From: Podarcis vaucheri
Taxonomy: Eukaryota
Reading direction: 5' to 3' (one strand)
Length of the DNA: 64,000 nucleotides
NCBI GenBank assembly: GCA_965113315.1
Contig: OZ220369.1
Shown: positions 5,008 through 63,153 of the stretch, in pieces
Numbering within the stretch: the first letter of the stretch is position 1
Layout of the letters: each line of letters opens with the position of its first letter
Program-made: the position numbers and the translations under genes
Notes under the pieces: generated by a model
The model's database searches: none
What the model was told of the DNA's origin: nothing
The model's input: the letters and a program-made list of their open reading frames with translations, nothing else

Positions 5008-5357
5008 AAAGGTAAAAGTAAAGATAAGGGACCCCTGACCATTAGGTCCAGTCGTGACCGTCTCTGGGGTTGCGGCGCTTATCTCGCTTTATTGGCCGAG
5101 GGAACCGGCATACAGCTTCTGGGTCGTGTGGCCAGCATGACTAAGCCACTTCTGGCGAACCAGAGCAGCGCACGGAAATGCCGTTTGCCTTCCCGCTGAA
5201 GCAATACCTATTTATCTACTTGCACTTTGATGTGCTTTTGAACTGCTAGGTGGGCAGGAGCAGGGACCGAGCAATGGGAGCTCACCCTGTTGCGGGGATT
5301 TGAACCGCCGACCTTCTGATCGGCAAGTCCTAGGCAAGTTGTGGCCACCCGCGTCCC
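5008..5357 (-). mobile_element. Sauria SINE
   Basis: Reverse complement of the copy at 62797-63153; (accttt)-type tail; flanked by aacattaaaag-like direct repeats. Confidence 0.92.
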
Positions 5358-44765: not shown

Positions 44766-45859
44766 CCGTATTTTTCGCCCTATAGGACGCACCGGCCCAT
44801 AGGACGCACCTAGTTTTTTGGGGGGGAAATCAAGGGAAATTTTTTTATTTCCCCCCCCCCAGGTTTGCGCAGCCATCCCCAAGCTAGAAGAGGGAGACGG
44901 AGCCTTCAGGGACAGCCTCCCTAGCCTCTGTGGGGCAGCGCACTGCGCTACCCTGCAGAGGCTTTGCGCAACCATCCCAAGCTAGAAGAGGGAGACGGAG
45001 TGCTCCGTCTCCCTCTTCTGCCTTCAGGGACAGCTTGGCCGCTATCCCGCGAGCTTGTGGGGCTGGCGGGGGGAGAAGCAGGCTTGCTTCTCCCCCCGCC
45101 AGCCTCCAGATCAGGTCGGGGAATAGCGGGATGGCGGCGCTTCGCCATCCCCCTATCCCCCGAGCTTGTGGGGCTGGCGGGGGGGAGAAGCAGGATTCTC
45201 CCCCCCCCCGCCAGCCTCCAGATCAGGTCAGGGAGTAGCAGGGTGGCAGCACTCCGCCACCCCCCTATCCCCCGAGCTTGTGGGGCTGGCGGGGGGGAGA
45301 AGCAAGCTTGCTTCTCCCCCCCCCGCCAGCCTCCAGATCAGGTCAGGGAGTAGCAGGGTGGCAGCGCTCCGCCACCCCCCTATCCCCCGAGCTTGTGGGG
45401 CTGGCGGGGGGGAGAAGCAAGCTTGCTTCTCCCCCCCCCCGCCAGCCTCCAGATCAGGTCGGGGAGTAGCAGGGTGGCAGCGCTCCGCCATCCCCCTATC
45501 CCCCGAGCTTGTGGGGCTGGCGGGGGGGGCAGAAGCAAGCTTGCTTCTCCCCCCCGCCAGCCTCCAGATCAGGTCGGGGAATAGCGGGGTGGCAGCGCTC
45601 CGCCATCCCGCTATCCCCCGAGCTTGTGGGGCTGCAGGCTGCTGCCCACAAGCCTTGCGAGCCCGCGGGACATCCCTCCGGGCTTGCAAGACTTGCAGAT
45701 AGCTTCCTGAAGCCTGGAGAGCGAGAGGGGTCGGTGCGCACCGACCCCTCTCGCTCTCCAGGCTTCAGCGAAAGCCTGCATTCGCCCCATAAGATGCACA
45801 CACATTTCCCCTTCATTTTTGGAGGGGGAAAAGTGCGTCTTATAGGGCGAAAAATACGG
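44766..45859. mobile_element. TcMar-Tc2-like MITE, long form with internal tandem array
   Basis: TA|ccgtatttttcgccctataggacgcac ... gtgcgtcttatagggcgaaaaatacgg|TA; near-perfect 27-bp TIR and TA duplication. Confidence 0.93.
45045..45635. repeat. GC-rich tandem repeat, about 5 units of 111-116 bp, each unit palindromic
   Basis: gagcttgtggggctg recurs at 45051, 45162, 45274, 45389, 45505 and 45620. Confidence 0.95.
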
Positions 45860-49316: not shown

Positions 49317-52058
49317 ATCTAAAGAGCTCCACACACCTTAAGACCACAAAAACCAGAAGAGGCAGAAGACCAGCAAATCCAGAGTCTAAATGCCACCCCA
49401 AGTGTCCCACTGTGAGTCTGAGTTCGGTTGCAAATTCAGAGGGAGGCCTACAAGTCTTGGCATTCCTTAAAACACATACACACACACCAGTTAGCCAGCA
49501 AGTCTCTGTAACTCAAGATACTGCCATCCGCCCACGTGCAAAATTCCTGAAACTGTGCACATTTTCATACTTGGATAGTTGAGCGTGGCTTTTGCTCTGC
49601 CTGAGCTGAAACCAGCTTGGCCGCCACTGAATCCCAGATCATCCAAGTGGAGTGAATTTTGACTCTTTGCCCAGGCACCATATTTGAAACATTTCTCAAT
49701 TAATCACCCAAAGTAACTAACATTGTTGCCTTCCCAACAAAAACCACTAGTTTAAAGTATTGCGCATGTTGCATCTTATGAAAGAGCAATTATATAGCCA
49801 TCTCTTTCCGGCAGGTGGAGAATATGGTAAAGGACGGGTCAGCTGCAGGTTAATATTATACTTTTTTTTGTTAAGTATATTCATTCTTCTTTTCCTGAGA
49901 GAGAATTAATATATTTAACAAAAAGGTATAAAGGGAAAGGAGAAACCTCTCCAACCTTTCAAGTCCCCCGCTTTAAGGCACATGGTAGAAGATGGAGGTG
50001 GGAAACCATTAGGATACAATTTCAAATATTAAATTCAAATGTAGGATTAAATGAGATTTATTTCAAAGCCCCAGCGATTGTCTGGAATTGAGACTTTCAA
50101 AATTTTGACATCAGGCACAACCAGATGCTGGGCACAATTTGGATCCATTCAGTACAAAAGTAGCACCTTGAAAGTGAAACATCCCAAGTCTGTTTTGTAG
50201 GGTGAACATTTCATCTTTTTCCAAAAAAAGAAAAAGAAAGAGAAGATTTTCTTTCCAAAAGCTGTTTCGTTGCCAGAGAAGCTGAAAGGGAATCATTGTA
50301 TAATAGAGCGGCTTTTGTTAATAGCAATGTCACGGGAATTCAACGCGCCTGAGTTCTGAAGAATAATAAAAAAATACCATGGTTTTTTCAAGGCAGCAGA
50401 AAGCCCACAAGTATTTCACCAGCAGCCCACTCAAACCCCCTTTGAATATCCATCTTGTTCCGTCAGATCTTGGCTTTTCTTGCTCTCTGAACAGTTTGGC
50501 TTATATTGTGCTGCTATGTAGGGCATGTAATTTCATATGAATATGAAAATCTGTGACACAGATTTGCATACCATATGCCTATGCTGATTTAGATATATCG
50601 TTTTATACATGCAAAATTGGTTTACTCATGAGATTTCTTACCCACCCTTCACCATAAGGCCCCAGCATGGGTTACAACAACATAATCATGCAATTAAGAA
50701 ACAAGTCCAATGGTTTATACAATTATAAAGAAGCAAGCAAAAGAGCTCTGAACAAAGATGACAGGGCAGATGACAGAAGAAATAGGTCTCACTAAAATAT
50801 CTTAGCTGTCAAAGGCCAGGGCAACGGTGGTGTGTGGCACATCATTGTGGGGAATGAATTCTTCATTTTAAGGCAAGGAAGGGGAACCTGTGGCCCTCCA
50901 GATGTTGCTGCACTACAACTCCCATCATCCCTGGCCATTGGCTATGCTTTCTTTCCTAGAGGTAGAAAAGATAAGGTGGACCCTGCTGAATCAGTTCAAT
51001 GTCTCATCTGGTCCAACATCCTGTTCTCACAGTGGCCAATCAGAGAACAATGTGAAACCCGCAAGCAGGACCTAAACACAACAATCCTCTCCTGAGGTTT
51101 CCAGCAACTGATATTCAGAAGCATTACTGCCTCCGACAATGGAGATACAACAAAGTCACTGTTAACCATGAATCCATCAATATTTCTCCTACTGTGATGC
51201 TGCTTTTCCTCAGCTGCCCAGCTACACCCGTTCACTGAATACTCTTAGAATAGCACAAACAGGGCTATAGTGTGATGGTGAACGACCAACAGCAGCCTTC
51301 ACCCGTCTTTCTTTTTGTGGCAATCAGCATAAACGGGATCCTGGGTTTTTGGGTTTTTTTCCTGAAAGGAGTTAAGACAGAAGACCTTCAGATAATCTAC
51401 CGAAACCTGCAATCTCAATTTGAAAGATTCCAAGCATAGCTAGGAAATTAAAGGGTGGAGGGGGAAGAGAAACCTGACTTTTTAATTCTCCCGATTTCTG
51501 GCTTCCATCAAATAGACCCACCAGCATCCATAAATGGAATGAAAACTTGTGGAATTGCCTTGTTAAATAGCTTGATTGCTTCAACGTTCACATCACCTAC
51601 ATAGACCATTAGCTGAAACCTGAAGAGGGCAATCAGGAGAGTGGGTGACGGGGCAGACCTCAAAAGGTTTGGACATGTGTCTCCATCTCTCACTTAAAAA
51701 AGAAAGAGAGAATTTAAAGCTTTCATTGGGCAGAAAATCTTGCAAGAAAAGCAAGTGTTTCTCCTCAGAGAGATTTATGTTCTCTTCCAAAACAATTAAA
51801 TGTCACAGAAATTGCCTCTCTCTGATATAGTTTCTACTTCTGTTGCTGGCTGTAAGCTTAAGCAGAACATTTCAGGAGTCAACATCAACATTTTCAAAAG
51901 TACATTTAAAAAAGTCAAGTCTCATCTGAGCATCCTGGAGGCAAGAGCATCCATAGATAAGCTGCATTGTCAAACTATTGTGATTTTGAAGAGTTTCAGG
52001 TGTTGTCCAGCTATGCTCCTTTGAGGTTAAGAAATCTGGAGGGGGCTTTAAAGGATCC

Positions 52059-52059
<1 letters not shown>

Positions 52060-52125
<66 letters not shown>

Positions 52126-52127
52126 AC
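52060..52127. repeat. (TC)n(AC)n compound microsatellite
   Basis: Directly visible. Confidence 0.95.
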
Positions 52128-52363
52128 TATTAGTTTCTCACAGCTAGTTATATGTTGAGATACCACTGCATGGAAATCTTAATATCTAAGATAAGCTCCT
52201 GTTCTCACACTGGCACCTGGAATAAGGAGTACTGGTTAGTCTTAAAAGTTATCTGTGTGGGTTGCCTGCCAAGCATGAAGAAGTCTTTCACTTAAATTGG
52301 AAGATACATGCCACCCAGCACTCAATATGGCTTATGCAACCCCAACAACATCTAAGCTTCGAG

Positions 52364-53205
52364 CAGTGGTGTAGCGTGGGTTGTCAGCACCCGGGGCAAG
52401 GCAAGTAATTTGCGCCCCCTAACCCGTGGATTTTAGCACTCGAGTGTGAGCGCGCCCCCCCCCAGATGTTGCGCCCGGCCCCCTGCACCCCCCACGCTAC
52501 GCCACTGGGGCTGGGGGCGAGCGAAGGAGCCAAGAACCCCCCCCCAAAGGCTCAGCAGGAATTTATTAAATTTATTATTTGTGGAGCCCCCGCGGGCCGA
52601 GGCAGCCAAAGCCCCCTCCCCTCGGGCACCTCCCCGCCCCCTCCTCTCCTTGGGCTGTAGGTGGAGCTCCAGATCCGGGCTTGGCGAGCGCCTCTCCTCC
52701 CTGTCGGGTCCGGGGGCTTCCAGCCGTGCTCCGTCCTGCCCCCCCCCACGGCTGAGACTTGCGCTGAGAGGCGGAGCCAGCGGCACCCCCTTCTGCCGGG
52801 AGACCCTTGCCCGCCCGCCGGCTTCCTCTTGGAGGGTTTTGGGGAGCGCAGGGTGCAGCGAGGCCCCTCGGAGCTCTCCTCCCTCCCAGTCGGCAGAAGC
52901 AGCCGCCGCCTGTGGCTGGGCCGAGGGGATGGCGGCGGCGGCGGGGTGCGGAGGCTGCCCGTGCCCGGCCAGGTGTCGGTGGCGGTGTCGGCGCTGCTGC
53001 AGCGGCTGCTCCTCCTGCGAGCAGTGAGTGGAGTGCAGTCGCAGCGGCGGCCAAGGGCGCGCGCGCGCTAGAGCGCAAGGCTGGCGGTGGCGGCGGGGAG
53101 CCCGGCGGAGGAAGGAACGTGTCCCTTCCCTCTGGACTCGCCCCCCCCCCAGATGTTGCGCCCGGTGCGGCCGGCACCCCTGGCACCCCCCACGCTACGC
53201 CACTG
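52364..53205 (+). mobile_element. Non-autonomous hAT (Tip100-like termini) with doubled 3' end and about 630 bp CpG-rich cargo
   Basis: TIR cagtggtgtagcgtggg / cccacgctacgccactg; perfect TSD gcttcgag (52356-52363, 53206-53213); extra internal 3' terminus ending at 52507. Confidence 0.93.
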
Positions 53206-56064
53206 GCTTCGAGATCAGCTCTGCTAGACAGGACCTCAATGTACACCCTAGACTGCAGAAAATGCTGCACACCAGCCAAGCTCTCCCTGAAGCTTTAGGA
53301 GTCATGTCTGTTGCTGATGGGGTCCCCTGAGACCACAGGGATATAAGCATAAGTGTACTGCTTTGTAGTTTTCTTTTAGTCCACTTAATAGAATCTTTAG
53401 CCTGCACCCCATTTCTGTGTTCATTGTGTTCTGAATCCAAAGAGAATATTGGCTCCAAGGCAGAACACAAGCATCAATTTGCCACCATATGAGGGGACAG
53501 AACAGAAGAAGGTTTAGCCAGAAGGAGCTACAGCACTTTTATAATATTCATTTATACACTAAGATAATATTGGGGTTTTTTGGCACATCATTGTTTACTT
53601 ATCTAAAAACAATTTTTAAATCATGCTTTTCAGCCAAAAACAGAAGGCTCCCAGAGTGACTAACGAATCATAGAAACATAAAAGCCCCTGGCCTTAGCTT
53701 TACAATCTAAAAAGACCCAACACGAAAGGAAAATGGATTGTGAAGGAGGAAAAAACAAGCAAACTTAGATTCAAGTTCTTAGTTGCAAGTTGTTCTAATG
53801 ACCAGCTGGGAAGGGAAAAGATCATAAAATTGCCTCAACCCTTATAGGCCCTGTTCTCCACAGCAGAGAGCATGTTGTTATTATCTGTGTGGAGTTTGGT
53901 TTATTGGAGTTAAGCCAGACTTTTGACAAGGGTGAAAGTGAGGGTTTGAAGGAGGAAAGAGGGGCATAGCTTGGGAAAAGTCCTGAGGACCAAACTAATG
54001 GCTACATTCAACTTCCAGGCCTGAGGTTCCCTATGCCCACTCTGAACCAATCCAATCCCAGTGATACCCACAAACCAGTTTGGTTGCATAGTGTTATGAC
54101 ATCATCGCATCCAGTATTTGATTTTGAGTGGGTTGGATGAAAACAATAATCACCAAAGAAGCCCTGAAGGGAGAAAAGGTACTGTGAACAGAAGGATTTT
54201 GTGGTGGTTTTTTGGGAGTAGGTGTGTGTCTTCCAAACACGGCTTCCTTGCTGAAAAGAAAACTCAGATAACCTTCTGTTAACCCCTAGAACAAACAGTC
54301 CCTATACATGTCTGTTTTCTTGCCCACCAATTGTTCTATCCCCACACAATCTCACCCATGACATCAACTCATTTTACTAGGGTTCTGTCAGTCATGTAAG
54401 GCCTTCACCATAACTATACATTGCAAAAGAGCTGTTTTATTATCCTAGGAGGAGCTGACCTGGAAATATCATTGGCACAAATACAGCACACTCTATAGCC
54501 TGCCCAAGAGGTAATTGGGTATTGATGTGTTTGTTCAAGGAGGTCTCATGGTAGCGGAGCCACCATCCATATTCCATAGCTCAATCCACCGGGTCCATCG
54601 GAAGCTGAGCAGAGTAGCAATTGTTGTGTTGACAGTTTTATGGCCTCCCTACCTCAGCTATTCAAAGAACCACATTATGTCTATGACGTTACCAAATCTT
54701 CCCATTTGGAAGTCATGTCATTGTTATTTGGAAAGGGCTAGGCAGCCTCACTGGAAATGCCTTTTGTTGGGGGCTGGAGAGATTTTTATTTTTGCATTGT
54801 CAAATAATCTGTTAGGAGTCAGCATTATGTGCAGAGGAGTAAATTGAAAAGGAAATGCTTCTCGGACTTTCAGCATGTGAGGTGAGGAGGAAAGGAGAAG
54901 TTATTTAGCTCAACATACCGAAGGGGGAAATCATTTGCTCTTGAGCTCAATTGTGGTTTTCAAAGGTCAGCAGGGAAGACCTTTGCCTGGTGACCTTCCC
55001 ATTCCAGCTCATCTCTCACTAGGGACACAACAAACCCAGAGTGCTGCATCCCAGGGGTTTCCAGCCTTTTCAGACCCAGGGACACATTTTGAATTCTGTT
55101 GTGGGCACCACTACAAAATGGCTCAATGATAAGCCTCTTTTCCAGTTGGTTTAAAACAATGGTTTGAATTATATTTATTTAAATCAATCCAGGCTGCCCG
55201 ACGCAAAGTTAAAAGAAAAACAACAACACCCAGATGTACTTCTTTAAAAATGGGAAGGACAAGGGGCCTCAATTTGCATGGTGCCCACAATCTTCATTTT
55301 GAGGACCCCAACGCTAGACCATACAAGCACCATTTTTACCTCTTCTCCCAAGGCACTGTGATTGGAGTGCCCTGGGAAAACAATTAACTCTGTTTAAAAG
55401 CTAGACCTGCCCATCAAAACAAAAGATCCCCTCCCCTCTCAGGCTCTGAGTGTTTCCCCAGACAGGTTGATTTCAGTTCTTATGGTGAGGATCTAACAAA
55501 TCTGCTTTGTTTGGAGAGCTGAAGTCGCAGCACTACTTGGAAGCCTAAGGTCCCTGAGATGCCTTGAAGCACCTTGTAGATAATGCCTGATCTGGAAAGG
55601 TGAAAACCTTTCCTGAATCATCCTTATTCATCTAATTCATCTCATAATTTGGGGTACACCCGCCCCAATATTAGTCCACAACCAATGCTCACCCCTAATA
55701 ATAAATGAATGTTGTTATTTTAAAACTGAGCTGTTATTTTAAAACAGACCCAGAAAAGTCTTCAAGTAACTTACAATATATTTTAAAAATAAACGTTAAG
55801 TAAAAGCGCATAATAATGTAAGCACTCACAACAACACAGGCAATCCATTAAAAAAAAGCCACAAAGCAACTCAGCCCATTACAGCAGCAGAAAGTTTTGG
55901 TGCACCCAATATAGCAGCAAAAGAACATTATCATAGTTCATCTAAAGCCTGTGGGGAAAGGTAAGCTTTTACCTGGTGCCCAGAGAATGCTGGATGAGGC
56001 ACCAGGCAGAGCTCATGAAATTCTCCTCCGTTCCTTGCTGGAGCTAAACAAGACATAGCTATAC

Positions 56065-56605
56065 AAATTAGGAGGCTTTGCTGCCTTGTACTGAAAGAAC
56101 ATTGGTCCATTTAGCTCAGTAGGGACCGGCAATGGCTCTCTGGGGTGTCAGGCAGGCATCCCTCCCAGCCCTACCTGGAGATGTTGAGGATTGAATCGGG
56201 CAGTGGCGTAGCGTGGGGGGTGCCAGGGGTGCCGGCCGCACCGGGCGCAACATTTGGGGGGGGCGCGTTTGGCCGGCCCTCCTCGAGGAAGCAGGAACCC
56301 CACTGTCCTCGGACCTCCTCCGAAGGCTGGCGGTGGGGCGGAGAGACCTCCTCCCGCCGCCAGGCTTCGGATGGCTGTCCTGAAGACTTGTGGTGGGAGC
56401 AGTGGCGTAGTGTGGGGGTCAGGGGGGCCTGCCGCACCTGGCGCAACATCTGGGGGGCGCAGAAGAGACTTGAGTGCTAAAATCCACGGGTTAGGGGGCA
56501 CAAATTACTTGCCTTGCCCCGGGTGCTGAGAACCCACGCTACGCCACTGGAATCGGGTGCCTTCTGCATGCAAAGGAGATGCTCTGCTGCTGAGCTATGG
56601 TCCTT
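56065..56605 (-). mobile_element. Squam3-like SINE interrupted by the hAT element
   Basis: SINE sequence ...ggattgaatcggg resumes as gaatcgggtgccttctgcatgcaaa after the insertion. Confidence 0.75.
56201..56549 (-). mobile_element. Second copy of the same hAT family, doubled 3' end, about 133 bp of different cargo
   Basis: Perfect TSD gaatcggg (56193-56200, 56550-56557); internal terminus cagtggcgtag at 56400; ends nearly identical to those of 52364-53205. Confidence 0.93.
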
Positions 56606-57097
56606 CCCCACATGAGCCTATGCAAACAGAGTTGTCTCCTTTGCATTTATGGTAAGCAGCCAAAGTACATAACAAAGGTTAGCTGCACTAACTATAAGCA
56701 ATGGGTTAACTTGCTGGACAGAGGCTTGCTGAGCAGAGATCCGAGTGCCGTTTTGCTCCCAGGAGCAGAATGCATCAGAGAAGTCTGGTCCATCACCCCC
56801 CCCCCCACACACACACAATACACCCAGTCAACTAGCACTGAGCTGATTAGCTAAGGGGCAGAGCATGTCACAGTCAGACTGCAATTTGCCATGCTAATCT
56901 TGCCATTCGCTCCTGTCTCTCCTCTTAGCCCCAGGACATAAGTGGGTCATTCCCTAATTCTGAGCAGATGAGCATAGGATTCCATGGTGATCTTTGCTGC
57001 AACAGGGGTGCTACAGGCATGCTCCTATTGTTATCTATGGCATGTGGAAGGGGATGCAAAGTGTACTTGCCCAGCCATTAGGCTGCTCCCCTTAGGT

Positions 57098-62796: not shown

Positions 62797-63153
62797 GGGA
62801 TGCAGGTGGTGCTGTGGGTTAAACCACAGAGCCTAGGACTTGCCGATCAGAAGGTCGGCAGTTCGAATCCCCATGACGGGGTGAGCTTCTGTTCCTCGGT
62901 CCCTGCTCCTGCCAACCTAGCAGTTCAAAAGCACGTCAAAGTGCAAGGAGATAAATAGGTACCGCTCTGGCGGGAAGGTAAACGGCGTTTCCGTGCACTG
63001 CTCTGGTTCACCAGAAGCGGCTTAGTCATGCTGGCCACATGACCCGGAAGCTGTACACCGGCTCCCTTGGCCAATAAAGCGAGATGAGCGTCGCAGCCCC
63101 AGAGTCGGTCATGACTGGACCTAATGGTCAGGGGTCCCTTTACCTTTTACCTT
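62797..63153 (+). mobile_element. Sauria SINE, full length
   Basis: gggatgcaggtggtgctgtgggttaaacc head, B box gttcgaatccc, tail ggtccctttaccttttacctt; 13-bp TSD tatgccacttttc (62784-62796, 63154-63166). Confidence 0.95.

What the first reader, a model, noticed from the sequence alone, without database searches (positions are those of the whole stretch)
52364..56549. Candidate vertebrate 'Pack-hAT' system: mini-MITE + swappable CpG-rich cargo + second 3' end
Seen in sequence: two elements 3 kb apart (52364-53205 on +, 56201-56549 on -), each bounded by a perfect 8-bp TSD (gcttcgag; gaatcggg), so each moved as one unit. Both have the same layout: a ~78-bp 5' end (3 differences between copies), a first complete 3' end (at 52507; at 56400), cargo, then a second ~65-bp 3' end that is nearly identical between copies. 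The cargos (~630 bp and ~133 bp) show no similarity I can see, and both are GC/CpG-rich in a CpG-poor window. Established: 8-bp TSDs and CAG...CTG termini define hATs; Pack-type DNA transposons that capture GC-rich gene fragments are well known in plants (Pack-MULE, Pack-CACTA) but are less documented in vertebrates. Inference: this family repeatedly captures host DNA next to its 3' end and gains a new 3' end, for example by template switching during gap repair or by alternative transposition, and so disperses CpG-island fragments.
Basis: partly seen in the sequence, partly recalled or inferred. Interest (0 to 1): 0.88.

Follow-up and report, generated by a model that had tools for sequence, protein, structure and literature searches.

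The report
Mobile composite hAT transposons in lizard
Two young cut-and-paste (hAT) transposons in a lizard genome each consist of a complete mini-element, extra DNA and a second right-hand end, and each jumped as one piece; but both belong to repeat subfamilies already present in tens to over a hundred copies, so they are not fresh captures of host gene DNA.

Summary
E1 (52364-53205, +) and E2 (56201-56549, -) share a 17-bp terminal inverted repeat (TIR). [quoted passage not shown] Each is built as 5' half, complete inner 3' half, cargo, outer 3' half. A contig from a related species passes both sites precisely empty with one TSD copy, so each composite inserted as a unit and recently.

The "swappable host CpG-island cargo" reading is only partly supported.
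- Raw reads of another related species put the mini-element (MITE) ends at thousands of copies.
- Cargo 1 stands at about 50-180 copies, with a family consensus and internal-deletion variants.
- E2's inner end stands at tens of copies.
- Cargo 2 is a ~95-nt foldback related to a hairpin repeat elsewhere in the window, not CpG-island DNA.
- Cargo 1 has a start-codon/splice-donor-like segment, but no donor or protein match was found.
- CpG richness is shared by other young repeats in the window.

The inner 3' halves are degenerate and the outer ones nearly identical, which fits bypass of the inner end. The architecture matches maize Ac/fAc composite insertions. Animal Pack-hATs are already documented, though multicopy ones are rare.

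This scan has already found such composites elsewhere in this genome (POLR2H, PKD2 and SIK2 cases; one case judged ordinary).

The parts
52356..52363 (.). E1 left target-site duplication GCTTCGAG
   Evidence: Only one copy is present at the empty site in run X1.
52364..52441 (+). E1 5' half of the hAT MITE. It has the 17-bp TIR, one 22-bp GCGCCCCCTAACCCGTGGATTT unit and the start of the TAGCACTCRAGT linker shared with E2.
   Evidence: Thousands of reads end at 52363/52364.
52442..52507 (+). E1 inner 3' half, complete to the TIR tip but lacking 11 bp (TGCGGCCGGCA) relative to the outer half.
   Evidence: Read depth on this deleted variant is about 200-450, so it is a subfamily trait.
52508..53139 (+). 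Cargo 1: 632 bp, 72% GC, CpG observed/expected 0.70. It is multicopy (about 50-180 copies in a related species).
   Evidence: depth 61/115/201 per bin against 1.14 for single-copy DNA; 7-44 distinct contigs per position; internal-deletion joints. No match elsewhere in the window.
52929..53029 (+). Exon-like piece in cargo 1: an ATG in good context, 32 codons, then GTGAGT (53024-53029).
   Evidence: No protein match, so it is unverified as an exon.
53140..53205 (+). E1 outer 3' half, the end actually used. It differs from E2's outer half at 1 base.
   Evidence: 2955 reads end at 53205/53206.
53206..53213 (.). E1 right target-site duplication GCTTCGAG
56193..56200 (.). E2 target-site duplication GAATCGGG (3' side of the element)
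56201..56266 (-). E2 outer 3' half
56267..56399 (-). Cargo 2: 133 bp, mostly a ~95-nt foldback. It is related to the hairpin unit of the tandem array at 45042-45634.
   Evidence: DNA fold -35.5 kcal/mol, z -3.5. (52-bp local match, 77% identity, z 8.7; GC-rich controls score 19-25 against 43).
56400..56471 (-). E2 inner 3' half, complete to the tip. It has three CG-to-CA changes, one of them inside the TIR.
   Evidence: Read depth 28 at 56419.
56472..56549 (-). E2 5' half
56550..56557 (.). E2 target-site duplication GAATCGGG (5' side of the element)
56100..56640 (-). tRNA-derived SINE copy that E2 interrupts
   Evidence: sequence; about 100-150 contigs per run continue as an uninterrupted SINE at 56195/56560, with joints 56183/56195->56560.

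Best explanation
E1 and E2 are recent insertions of two amplified chimeric subfamilies of one very abundant hAT MITE. Each subfamily is a composite. It has a complete MITE whose own 3' half has degenerated, then a stretch of unrelated DNA that begins exactly at that MITE's 3' tip, then an intact 3' half. A hAT transposase supplied in trans pairs the 5' end with the outer 3' end and skips the crippled inner one. The whole composite therefore cuts and pastes as a unit and makes an 8-bp TSD. This part is shown. Inferred: each composite arose once, by an aberrant event on the 3' side of a MITE. The event could have been alternative transposition with re-replication, as in maize Ac/fAc composite insertions. 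It could also have been repair synthesis that ran off an ectopic MITE copy into its flank and rejoined at the GCGCCCCC/poly-C microhomology that opens the 3' half. The composite then multiplied to tens or hundreds of copies. Cargo 1 may descend from a gene's CpG-island 5' region (roughly even odds). Cargo 2 descends from a foldback repeat.
For: hAT hallmarks and unit mobility: the TIR occurs only at the predicted ends, the 8-bp TSDs are perfect, and both sites are precisely empty in one contig of a related species (X1 record 2). Family size: about 3400 and 2950 reads of a ~1.14x sample end at the outer tips. The canonical short MITE joint 52433+GCCCTAA+53147 has about 1100-1200 reads. Cargo 1 as a family body: depth is 61, 115 and 201 per bin. 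At ten listed positions nearly all reads disagree with this copy, five of them at consensus CpGs. Some reads carry 0-2 other differences. Deletion joints lie inside the cargo. Each position is covered by 7-44 distinct short contigs in three species. The inner 3' half with E1's 11-bp deletion has depth 200-450, matching the cargo rather than the thousands seen on the arms. Inner ends are decayed and outer ends intact: outer versus outer is 97% identical, inner versus outer 81-88%, and E2's inner half carries three CG-to-CA changes. E1 and E2 share the linker TAGCACTCRAGT, whereas most family reads leave the sequence at 52433. Published precedent for the architecture: maize composite insertions (PMC4270019).
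Against: No second full copy of either composite could be fetched. That the whole subfamily has the layout inner end plus cargo rests on matching depths, not on assembled copies. The read depths come from a sister species at about 1x, and GC bias is uncontrolled. The origin event is inferred from two examples only. No autonomous element was found. If a simple macrotransposon were the origin, a second 5' half should be present, and it is not.
Confidence: 0.7

Rival explanations
1. The family repeatedly picks up single-copy host CpG-island or first-exon DNA next to its 3' end, and E1 and E2 are two such independent host captures.
For: Two elements with the same arms carry unrelated interiors. 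Cargo 1 has a well-placed ATG, 32 open codons and a GTGAGT donor. Other follow-up reports on this genome describe the same kind of element carrying POLR2H and PKD2 first exons (not tested here). Animal Pack-hATs exist (PMC8277862).
Against: Cargo 1 stands at about 50-180 copies with its own consensus. Cargo 2 is a foldback related to another repeat. No donor or protein match was found. CpG richness is shared by the arms and by unrelated TEs. The shared rare linker suggests a common composite ancestor rather than independent captures. Another follow-up judged a similar 'promoter plus exon' body to be an ordinary family interior.
Confidence: 0.3
2. The cargos are interior pieces of longer members of the same hAT family, autonomous or not. 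A MITE inserted inside such an element in direct orientation. The sub-element running from the MITE's 5' end to the host element's 3' end then transposed. Different deletions give the different 'cargos'.
For: Read depth in cargo 1 rises towards the 3' end (41 at 52702 to 224 at 53072), and the 5' edge (81 at 52535) stands above the dip at 52702. This is as expected for subterminal regions shared by many deletion derivatives. Deletion joints lie inside the cargo. The outer 3' half starts at the same GCGCCCCC/poly-C point in both elements. This route needs no extra deletion step.
Against: The two cargos differ right up to the outer 3' half. No transposase similarity appears in any frame. The 72% GC exon-like interior and the foldback look foreign to a transposase gene.
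Confidence: 0.25
3. Chance juxtaposition or an assembly artefact: separate MITE fragments and GC-rich DNA that never moved together.
For: None beyond the abundance of the MITE.
Against: The outer 8-bp TSDs are perfect. Both sites are precisely empty in a related species, and independent contigs of the same species cross the junctions.
Confidence: 0.02

Closest known systems
Maize Ac/fAc composite insertions from alternative (reversed-ends) transposition with re-replication (Zhang et al. 2014, eLife, PMC4270019)
   Same: Same hAT superfamily. The product is bounded by one 5' and one 3' terminus with an 8-bp TSD. Inside it lie a complete element, DNA that flanked it, and a 3'-only element fragment. 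This is the layout of E1 and E2.
   Different: The maize cases are single laboratory-observed events of kilobases. Here the composites are 0.35-0.84 kb, natural, in a vertebrate, and have themselves multiplied to tens or hundreds of copies. The precursor arrangement was not observed.
Animal Pack-TIRs, e.g. Pack-hAT-N8_XT of Xenopus tropicalis (Tan et al. 2021, PMC8277862)
   Same: A hAT non-autonomous element carries non-transposon DNA and is moved to new sites with distinct TSDs.
   Different: In that survey the parental copy was identified. Only 4 of 370 cases were multicopy, and the one described in detail, Pack-hAT-N8_XT, had three copies (the other three were not checked here). Here no parent was found, copy numbers are far higher, and an internal second 3' end is present.
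Plant Pack-MULE / Pack-CACTA / Pack-TYPE elements (PMC8903248; own knowledge)
   Same: Shared arms with varied, GC-rich interiors, and amplification of some chimeras.
   Different: Different superfamilies. The cargo lies between one 5' and one 3' arm with no redundant internal end, and host donors are demonstrable.
End-bypass transduction by Helitrons and by bacterial ISEcp1/IS91-type elements (own knowledge, not checked here)
   Same: It works alike. The element's own 3' end is skipped, a downstream end is used, the DNA in between is carried along, and the old end stays inside.
   Different: Those are rolling-circle or one-ended mechanisms. A hAT needs a true second 3' end for cut-and-paste.
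Ordinary 'hAT-N' non-autonomous families of vertebrate repeat libraries (own knowledge)
   Same: Short TIRs, an 8-bp TSD, an interior unrelated to transposase, and tens to thousands of copies.
   Different: Such entries do not usually contain a complete MITE plus a duplicated 3' end.

Membership tests
hAT superfamily (non-autonomous) | 8-bp target-site duplication created on insertion | tested here: met
   Perfect 8-bp repeats flank both elements. The empty sites in run X1 keep a single copy.
hAT superfamily (non-autonomous) | Short terminal inverted repeats starting CAG...CTG | tested here: met
   A 17-bp TIR CAGTGGCGTAGCGTGGG lies at all ends, six hits against 0.04 expected.
hAT superfamily (non-autonomous) | A matching autonomous element encoding a hAT transposase | not testable with these tools
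   None was seen in the element interiors (Pfam blank on the five longest ORFs across E1); the rest of the window was not screened for a transposase. The source genome cannot be searched. The TIR pattern is absent from the metagenome and viral collections.
Pack-TIR / Pack-hAT (host-sequence-carrying transposon) | The interior is derived from an identifiable non-transposon parental locus | tested here: inconclusive
   No protein match for the exon-like ORF or for longer ORFs. No nucleotide search of the genome is possible. Cargo 2 resembles another repeat.
Pack-TIR / Pack-hAT (host-sequence-carrying transposon) | The cargo is bounded by genuine transposon ends and mobilised with them | tested here: met
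   TSDs and precise empty sites.
Composite insertion / macrotransposon type hAT product | A complete element, then flanking DNA, then a second end fragment, inside one TSD | tested here: met
   Alignment of the inner and outer ends and the TSDs.
Composite insertion / macrotransposon type hAT product | Origin from two nearby ends at a donor locus | not testable with these tools
   This needs the donor locus. Only a first-reader note describes two MITEs bracketing a promoter elsewhere.

The most novel reading that the evidence does not exclude
This lizard MITE family is a serial flank transducer. Because composites keep an internal 3' half homologous to thousands of genomic copies, repair or alternative transposition repeatedly replaces what lies between the inner tip and the outer 3' half. 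That would create many mobile, amplifying cassettes of promoter, first exon and splice donor, on a scale and by a route not described for any vertebrate.
Probability: 0.25. Interest if true: 0.75.

Novelty: new variant of a known kind. Interest (0 to 1): 0.42.

Why it matters
Cut-and-paste transposons that carry foreign DNA are a known source of exon and promoter shuffling in plants. In animals the published cases are almost all single-copy. Here a vertebrate hAT family shows composite elements that carry an internal redundant end, were active recently enough to differ between sister species, and have multiplied to tens or hundreds of copies. If the cargos prove to be host 5' gene regions, this lineage would be a natural system for two questions. 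One is how hAT elements pick up flanking DNA. The other is whether dispersed start-exon and splice-donor cassettes create new transcripts. If they are only family interiors, this is an ordinary non-autonomous repeat with an unusual internal duplication.

Tried and rejected
- Donor search by protein. The 193-aa ORF spanning the inner end and cargo 1 gave no hit at E<=0.01 (only proteins of 106-338 aa were candidates). The 32-aa exon-like ORF gave no hit among 1.84 billion representatives. This is weak evidence, because the query is short and cysteine/alanine-rich. Pfam on five ORFs gave nothing meaningful.
- rDNA or structured-RNA origin of cargo 1. Rfam found nothing inside either element. The many short heterogeneous contigs argue against a homogeneous array.
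- Fetching more copies. The 26-nt TIR pattern is absent from the metagenome and viral contig collections. Search of earlier findings by sequence was blank.
- Literature search for the TIR string, and for squamate hAT MITEs carrying CpG islands, found nothing relevant.
- Similarity between the two cargos. The only match is a 27-bp GC-rich stretch, so I do not treat them as related.
- E2's cargo copy number could not be separated from its arms in the 171-bp depth bins. Only the depth of 28 at 56419 and multi-contig variants are usable.
- The sequencing-run and read-laying tools were each used once (their cap), so presence or absence in further species was not tested.
- Species names are coded. 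I did not try to name the lizard.
Full report
**1. What is in the sequence**

- E1 (52364-53205, + strand) starts CAGTGGTGTAGCGTGGG and ends CCCACGCTACGCCACTG.
- E2 (56201-56549, - strand) has the same ends.
- The 17-bp TIR, searched with up to three mismatches, occurs six times in the 64-kb window. All six are at the predicted positions: two outer and one inner end per element. Shuffles give 0.04 expected.
- The 8-bp flanks are perfect direct repeats: GCTTCGAG for E1 and GAATCGGG for E2.

Alignment and BLASTN give the internal layout.
- The ~78-bp 5' halves differ at three positions.
- The outer ~66-bp 3' halves match over 65 of 67 aligned bases (1 difference inside the 66-bp half).
- The inner 3' halves are complete to the tip but degenerate. 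E1's lacks 11 bp (TGCGGCCGGCA). E2's has three CG-to-CA changes, one of them inside the TIR.
- The cargos are 632 and 133 bp and share only a 27-bp GC-rich match.
- GC is 0.71 and 0.67 and CpG observed/expected 0.70 and 0.65, against 0.45 and 0.25 for the window.

**2. Did they move as units?**

Yes. Contigs and reads of four public runs were laid on 51900-57000.
- One 3509-bp contig of a related species (run X1, organism A, record 2) aligns 52137-52355, then 53206-56192, then 56550-56788.
- It therefore lacks exactly E1 plus one TSD copy (850 bp) and exactly E2 plus one TSD copy (357 bp).
- Contigs of the run that best holds the window (X15) cross both E1 junctions with no differences.
- Both composites are therefore true single insertion events, younger than the split of these species. 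The outer ends are the ones that were used.
- E2 sits inside a tRNA-derived SINE. More than a hundred contigs per run continue as an uninterrupted SINE across the insertion point (loose ends at 56195 and 56560).

**3. What family is this?**

Raw whole-genome reads of another related species (X24) were sampled at about 1.14x, estimated from sixteen unique bins.
- About 3400 reads break off at the 5' tip and about 2950 at the outer 3' tip. The MITE is therefore present in thousands of copies.
- The dominant form is a short MITE: 5' half to 52433, then GCCCTAA, then the 3' half from 53147. This joint has about 1100-1200 reads.
- A 22-bp unit, GCGCCCCCTAACCCGTGGATTT, is often repeated in tandem (about 1340 reads 'go back 22').
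- E1 and E2 instead share a linker, TAGCACTCRAGT, after GGATTT. Depth there is about 250, while about 2000 reads leave the sequence at 52433. The inner MITE module of both composites therefore belongs to the same minority lineage, roughly a tenth of the family.

**4. Are the cargos single-copy host DNA?**

They are not single-copy.

Cargo 1:
- Depth is 61, 115 and 201 in three successive 171-bp bins, about 50-180 copies.
- At ten listed positions essentially all reads, and all contigs in three species, carry a base different from this copy. Five of the ten are consensus CpG sites that read TpG or CpA here.
- Some reads differ from the window at nothing else.
- Each position is covered by 7-44 distinct short contigs per species.
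- Internal-deletion joints occur (52615->52694, 52631->52743, 52866->52938).
- Depth by position is 81 at 52535, 41 at 52702, and rises to 224 at 53072. This is the profile of a transposon family with internal-deletion derivatives.
- The 11-bp-deleted inner 3' half has depth 200-450. That matches the cargo, not the thousands seen on the arms, so the crippled inner end is a subfamily trait.

Cargo 2:
- E2's inner end has depth 28 at 56419, which means tens of copies.
- Cargo 2 folds as a ~95-nt near-perfect hairpin (-35.5 kcal/mol, z -3.5).
- It has a 52-bp, 77% local match to the hairpin unit of the 115-bp tandem array at 45042-45634. The score is 43, against 19-25 for GC-matched controls (z 8.7).
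- It is repeat-derived, not a CpG-island fragment.

CpG richness does not indicate a host origin in this window. The MITE arms are CpG-rich, and the other CpG-island-like stretches I inspected are SINE copies and the hairpin MITE.

**5. Is cargo 1 ultimately host-derived?**

This remains open.
- It contains an ATG in a good context at 52929, 32 open codons and a GTGAGT at 53024.
- Other follow-up reports on this genome describe the same promoter, first exon and donor pattern for POLR2H and PKD2 cargos. Those reports are leads that I could not test.
- The ORF found no protein among 1.84 billion representatives. A longer ORF found none either, and Pfam and Rfam were blank.
- A short, low-complexity N-terminus could easily escape these searches, so the blank is weak evidence.
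- Another follow-up judged a similar interior to be the standard body of a high-copy family.
- I put the odds of an ancient host origin for cargo 1 at about even, and treat cargo 2 as coming from another repeat.

**6. Mechanism**

Shown:
- A transposase acting in trans paired the 5' end with the outer 3' end.
- The inner 3' end was not used.

The inner ends carry a deletion or CpG-decay changes while the outer ends stay near the consensus. This is expected if only the outer end is under selection for mobility along the master lineage.

Inferred:
- In both elements the cargo starts exactly at the inner tip, so it was once DNA flanking a complete MITE.
- In both elements the outer half begins at the GCGCCCCC/poly-C tract. 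The same motif opens each 22-bp unit of the 5' half, which suggests microhomology-guided joining.

Three routes would give this architecture.
- Route 1: alternative transposition with re-replication, as demonstrated for maize Ac/fAc. It yields composite insertions made of transposon termini around duplicated flanking DNA, with an 8-bp TSD (PMC4270019).
- Route 2: repair synthesis that switches to an ectopic MITE, runs off into its flank and rejoins the 3' half copied from the other side of the break. This is related to the gap-filling and FoSTeST models for animal Pack-TIRs (PMC8277862).
- Route 3: a MITE nested in a longer family member, followed by transposition of the sub-element.

I cannot choose among these three routes with two copies. 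A plain macrotransposon of two whole MITEs is disfavoured, because no second 5' half is present.

**7. Comparison with what is known, and verdict**

- Membership in the hAT superfamily is met on the TSD and the TIR. The transposase could not be tested.
- Pack-hAT membership fails to be established on its defining point, an identified host parent.
- Pack-hATs in animals are published: 208 of 370 Pack-TIRs, with only four multicopy (PMC8277862).
- What stands out here is a natural, recently active vertebrate composite of the maize composite-insertion type that has itself become a repeat family.
- This is a new variant of a known kind and is moderately interesting.
- The same phenomenon has already been flagged many times in this genome by this scan: 30 notes hold the words, with several followed up.

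Noticed in passing
window 56100-56200 and 56550-56640: E2 is nested in the tRNA-like head of a SINE copy. Other copies of that SINE (about 100-150 contigs per run) run straight through the insertion point, which gives a second, internal 'empty site' control.
   Followed up: partly
window 45042-45634: A tandem array of 5.2 copies of a 115-bp GC-rich double-hairpin unit lies inside a larger MITE-like element (first-reader note s1-850281). Its hairpin module resembles E2's cargo, so this foldback unit may be a mobile or recombinogenic module shared between transposon families.
   Followed up: partly
window 52408-52429 (and family reads): The MITE's 5' half carries a 22-bp unit, GCGCCCCCTAACCCGTGGATTT, that is tandemly repeated in most genomic copies. 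The motif TTGCGCC recurs in both subterminal regions. It is a candidate transposase-binding repeat and a likely hot spot for the deletions and joins seen.
   Followed up: no
window 5050-5350 (-) and 62800-63150 (+): Two copies of another tRNA-derived SINE family, both CpG-rich. The second is flanked by a ~13-bp direct repeat, TATGCCACTTTTC. This shows that CpG richness marks young repeats generally in this genome.
   Followed up: no
window 52031-52187: Weak sub-threshold Rfam matches (snoZ178 at 25 bits, SCARNA7 at 18 bits) lie just upstream of E1, in a stretch that the read tool also skipped as repetitive (52051-52136). This is probably another repeat rather than an snoRNA.
   Followed up: no
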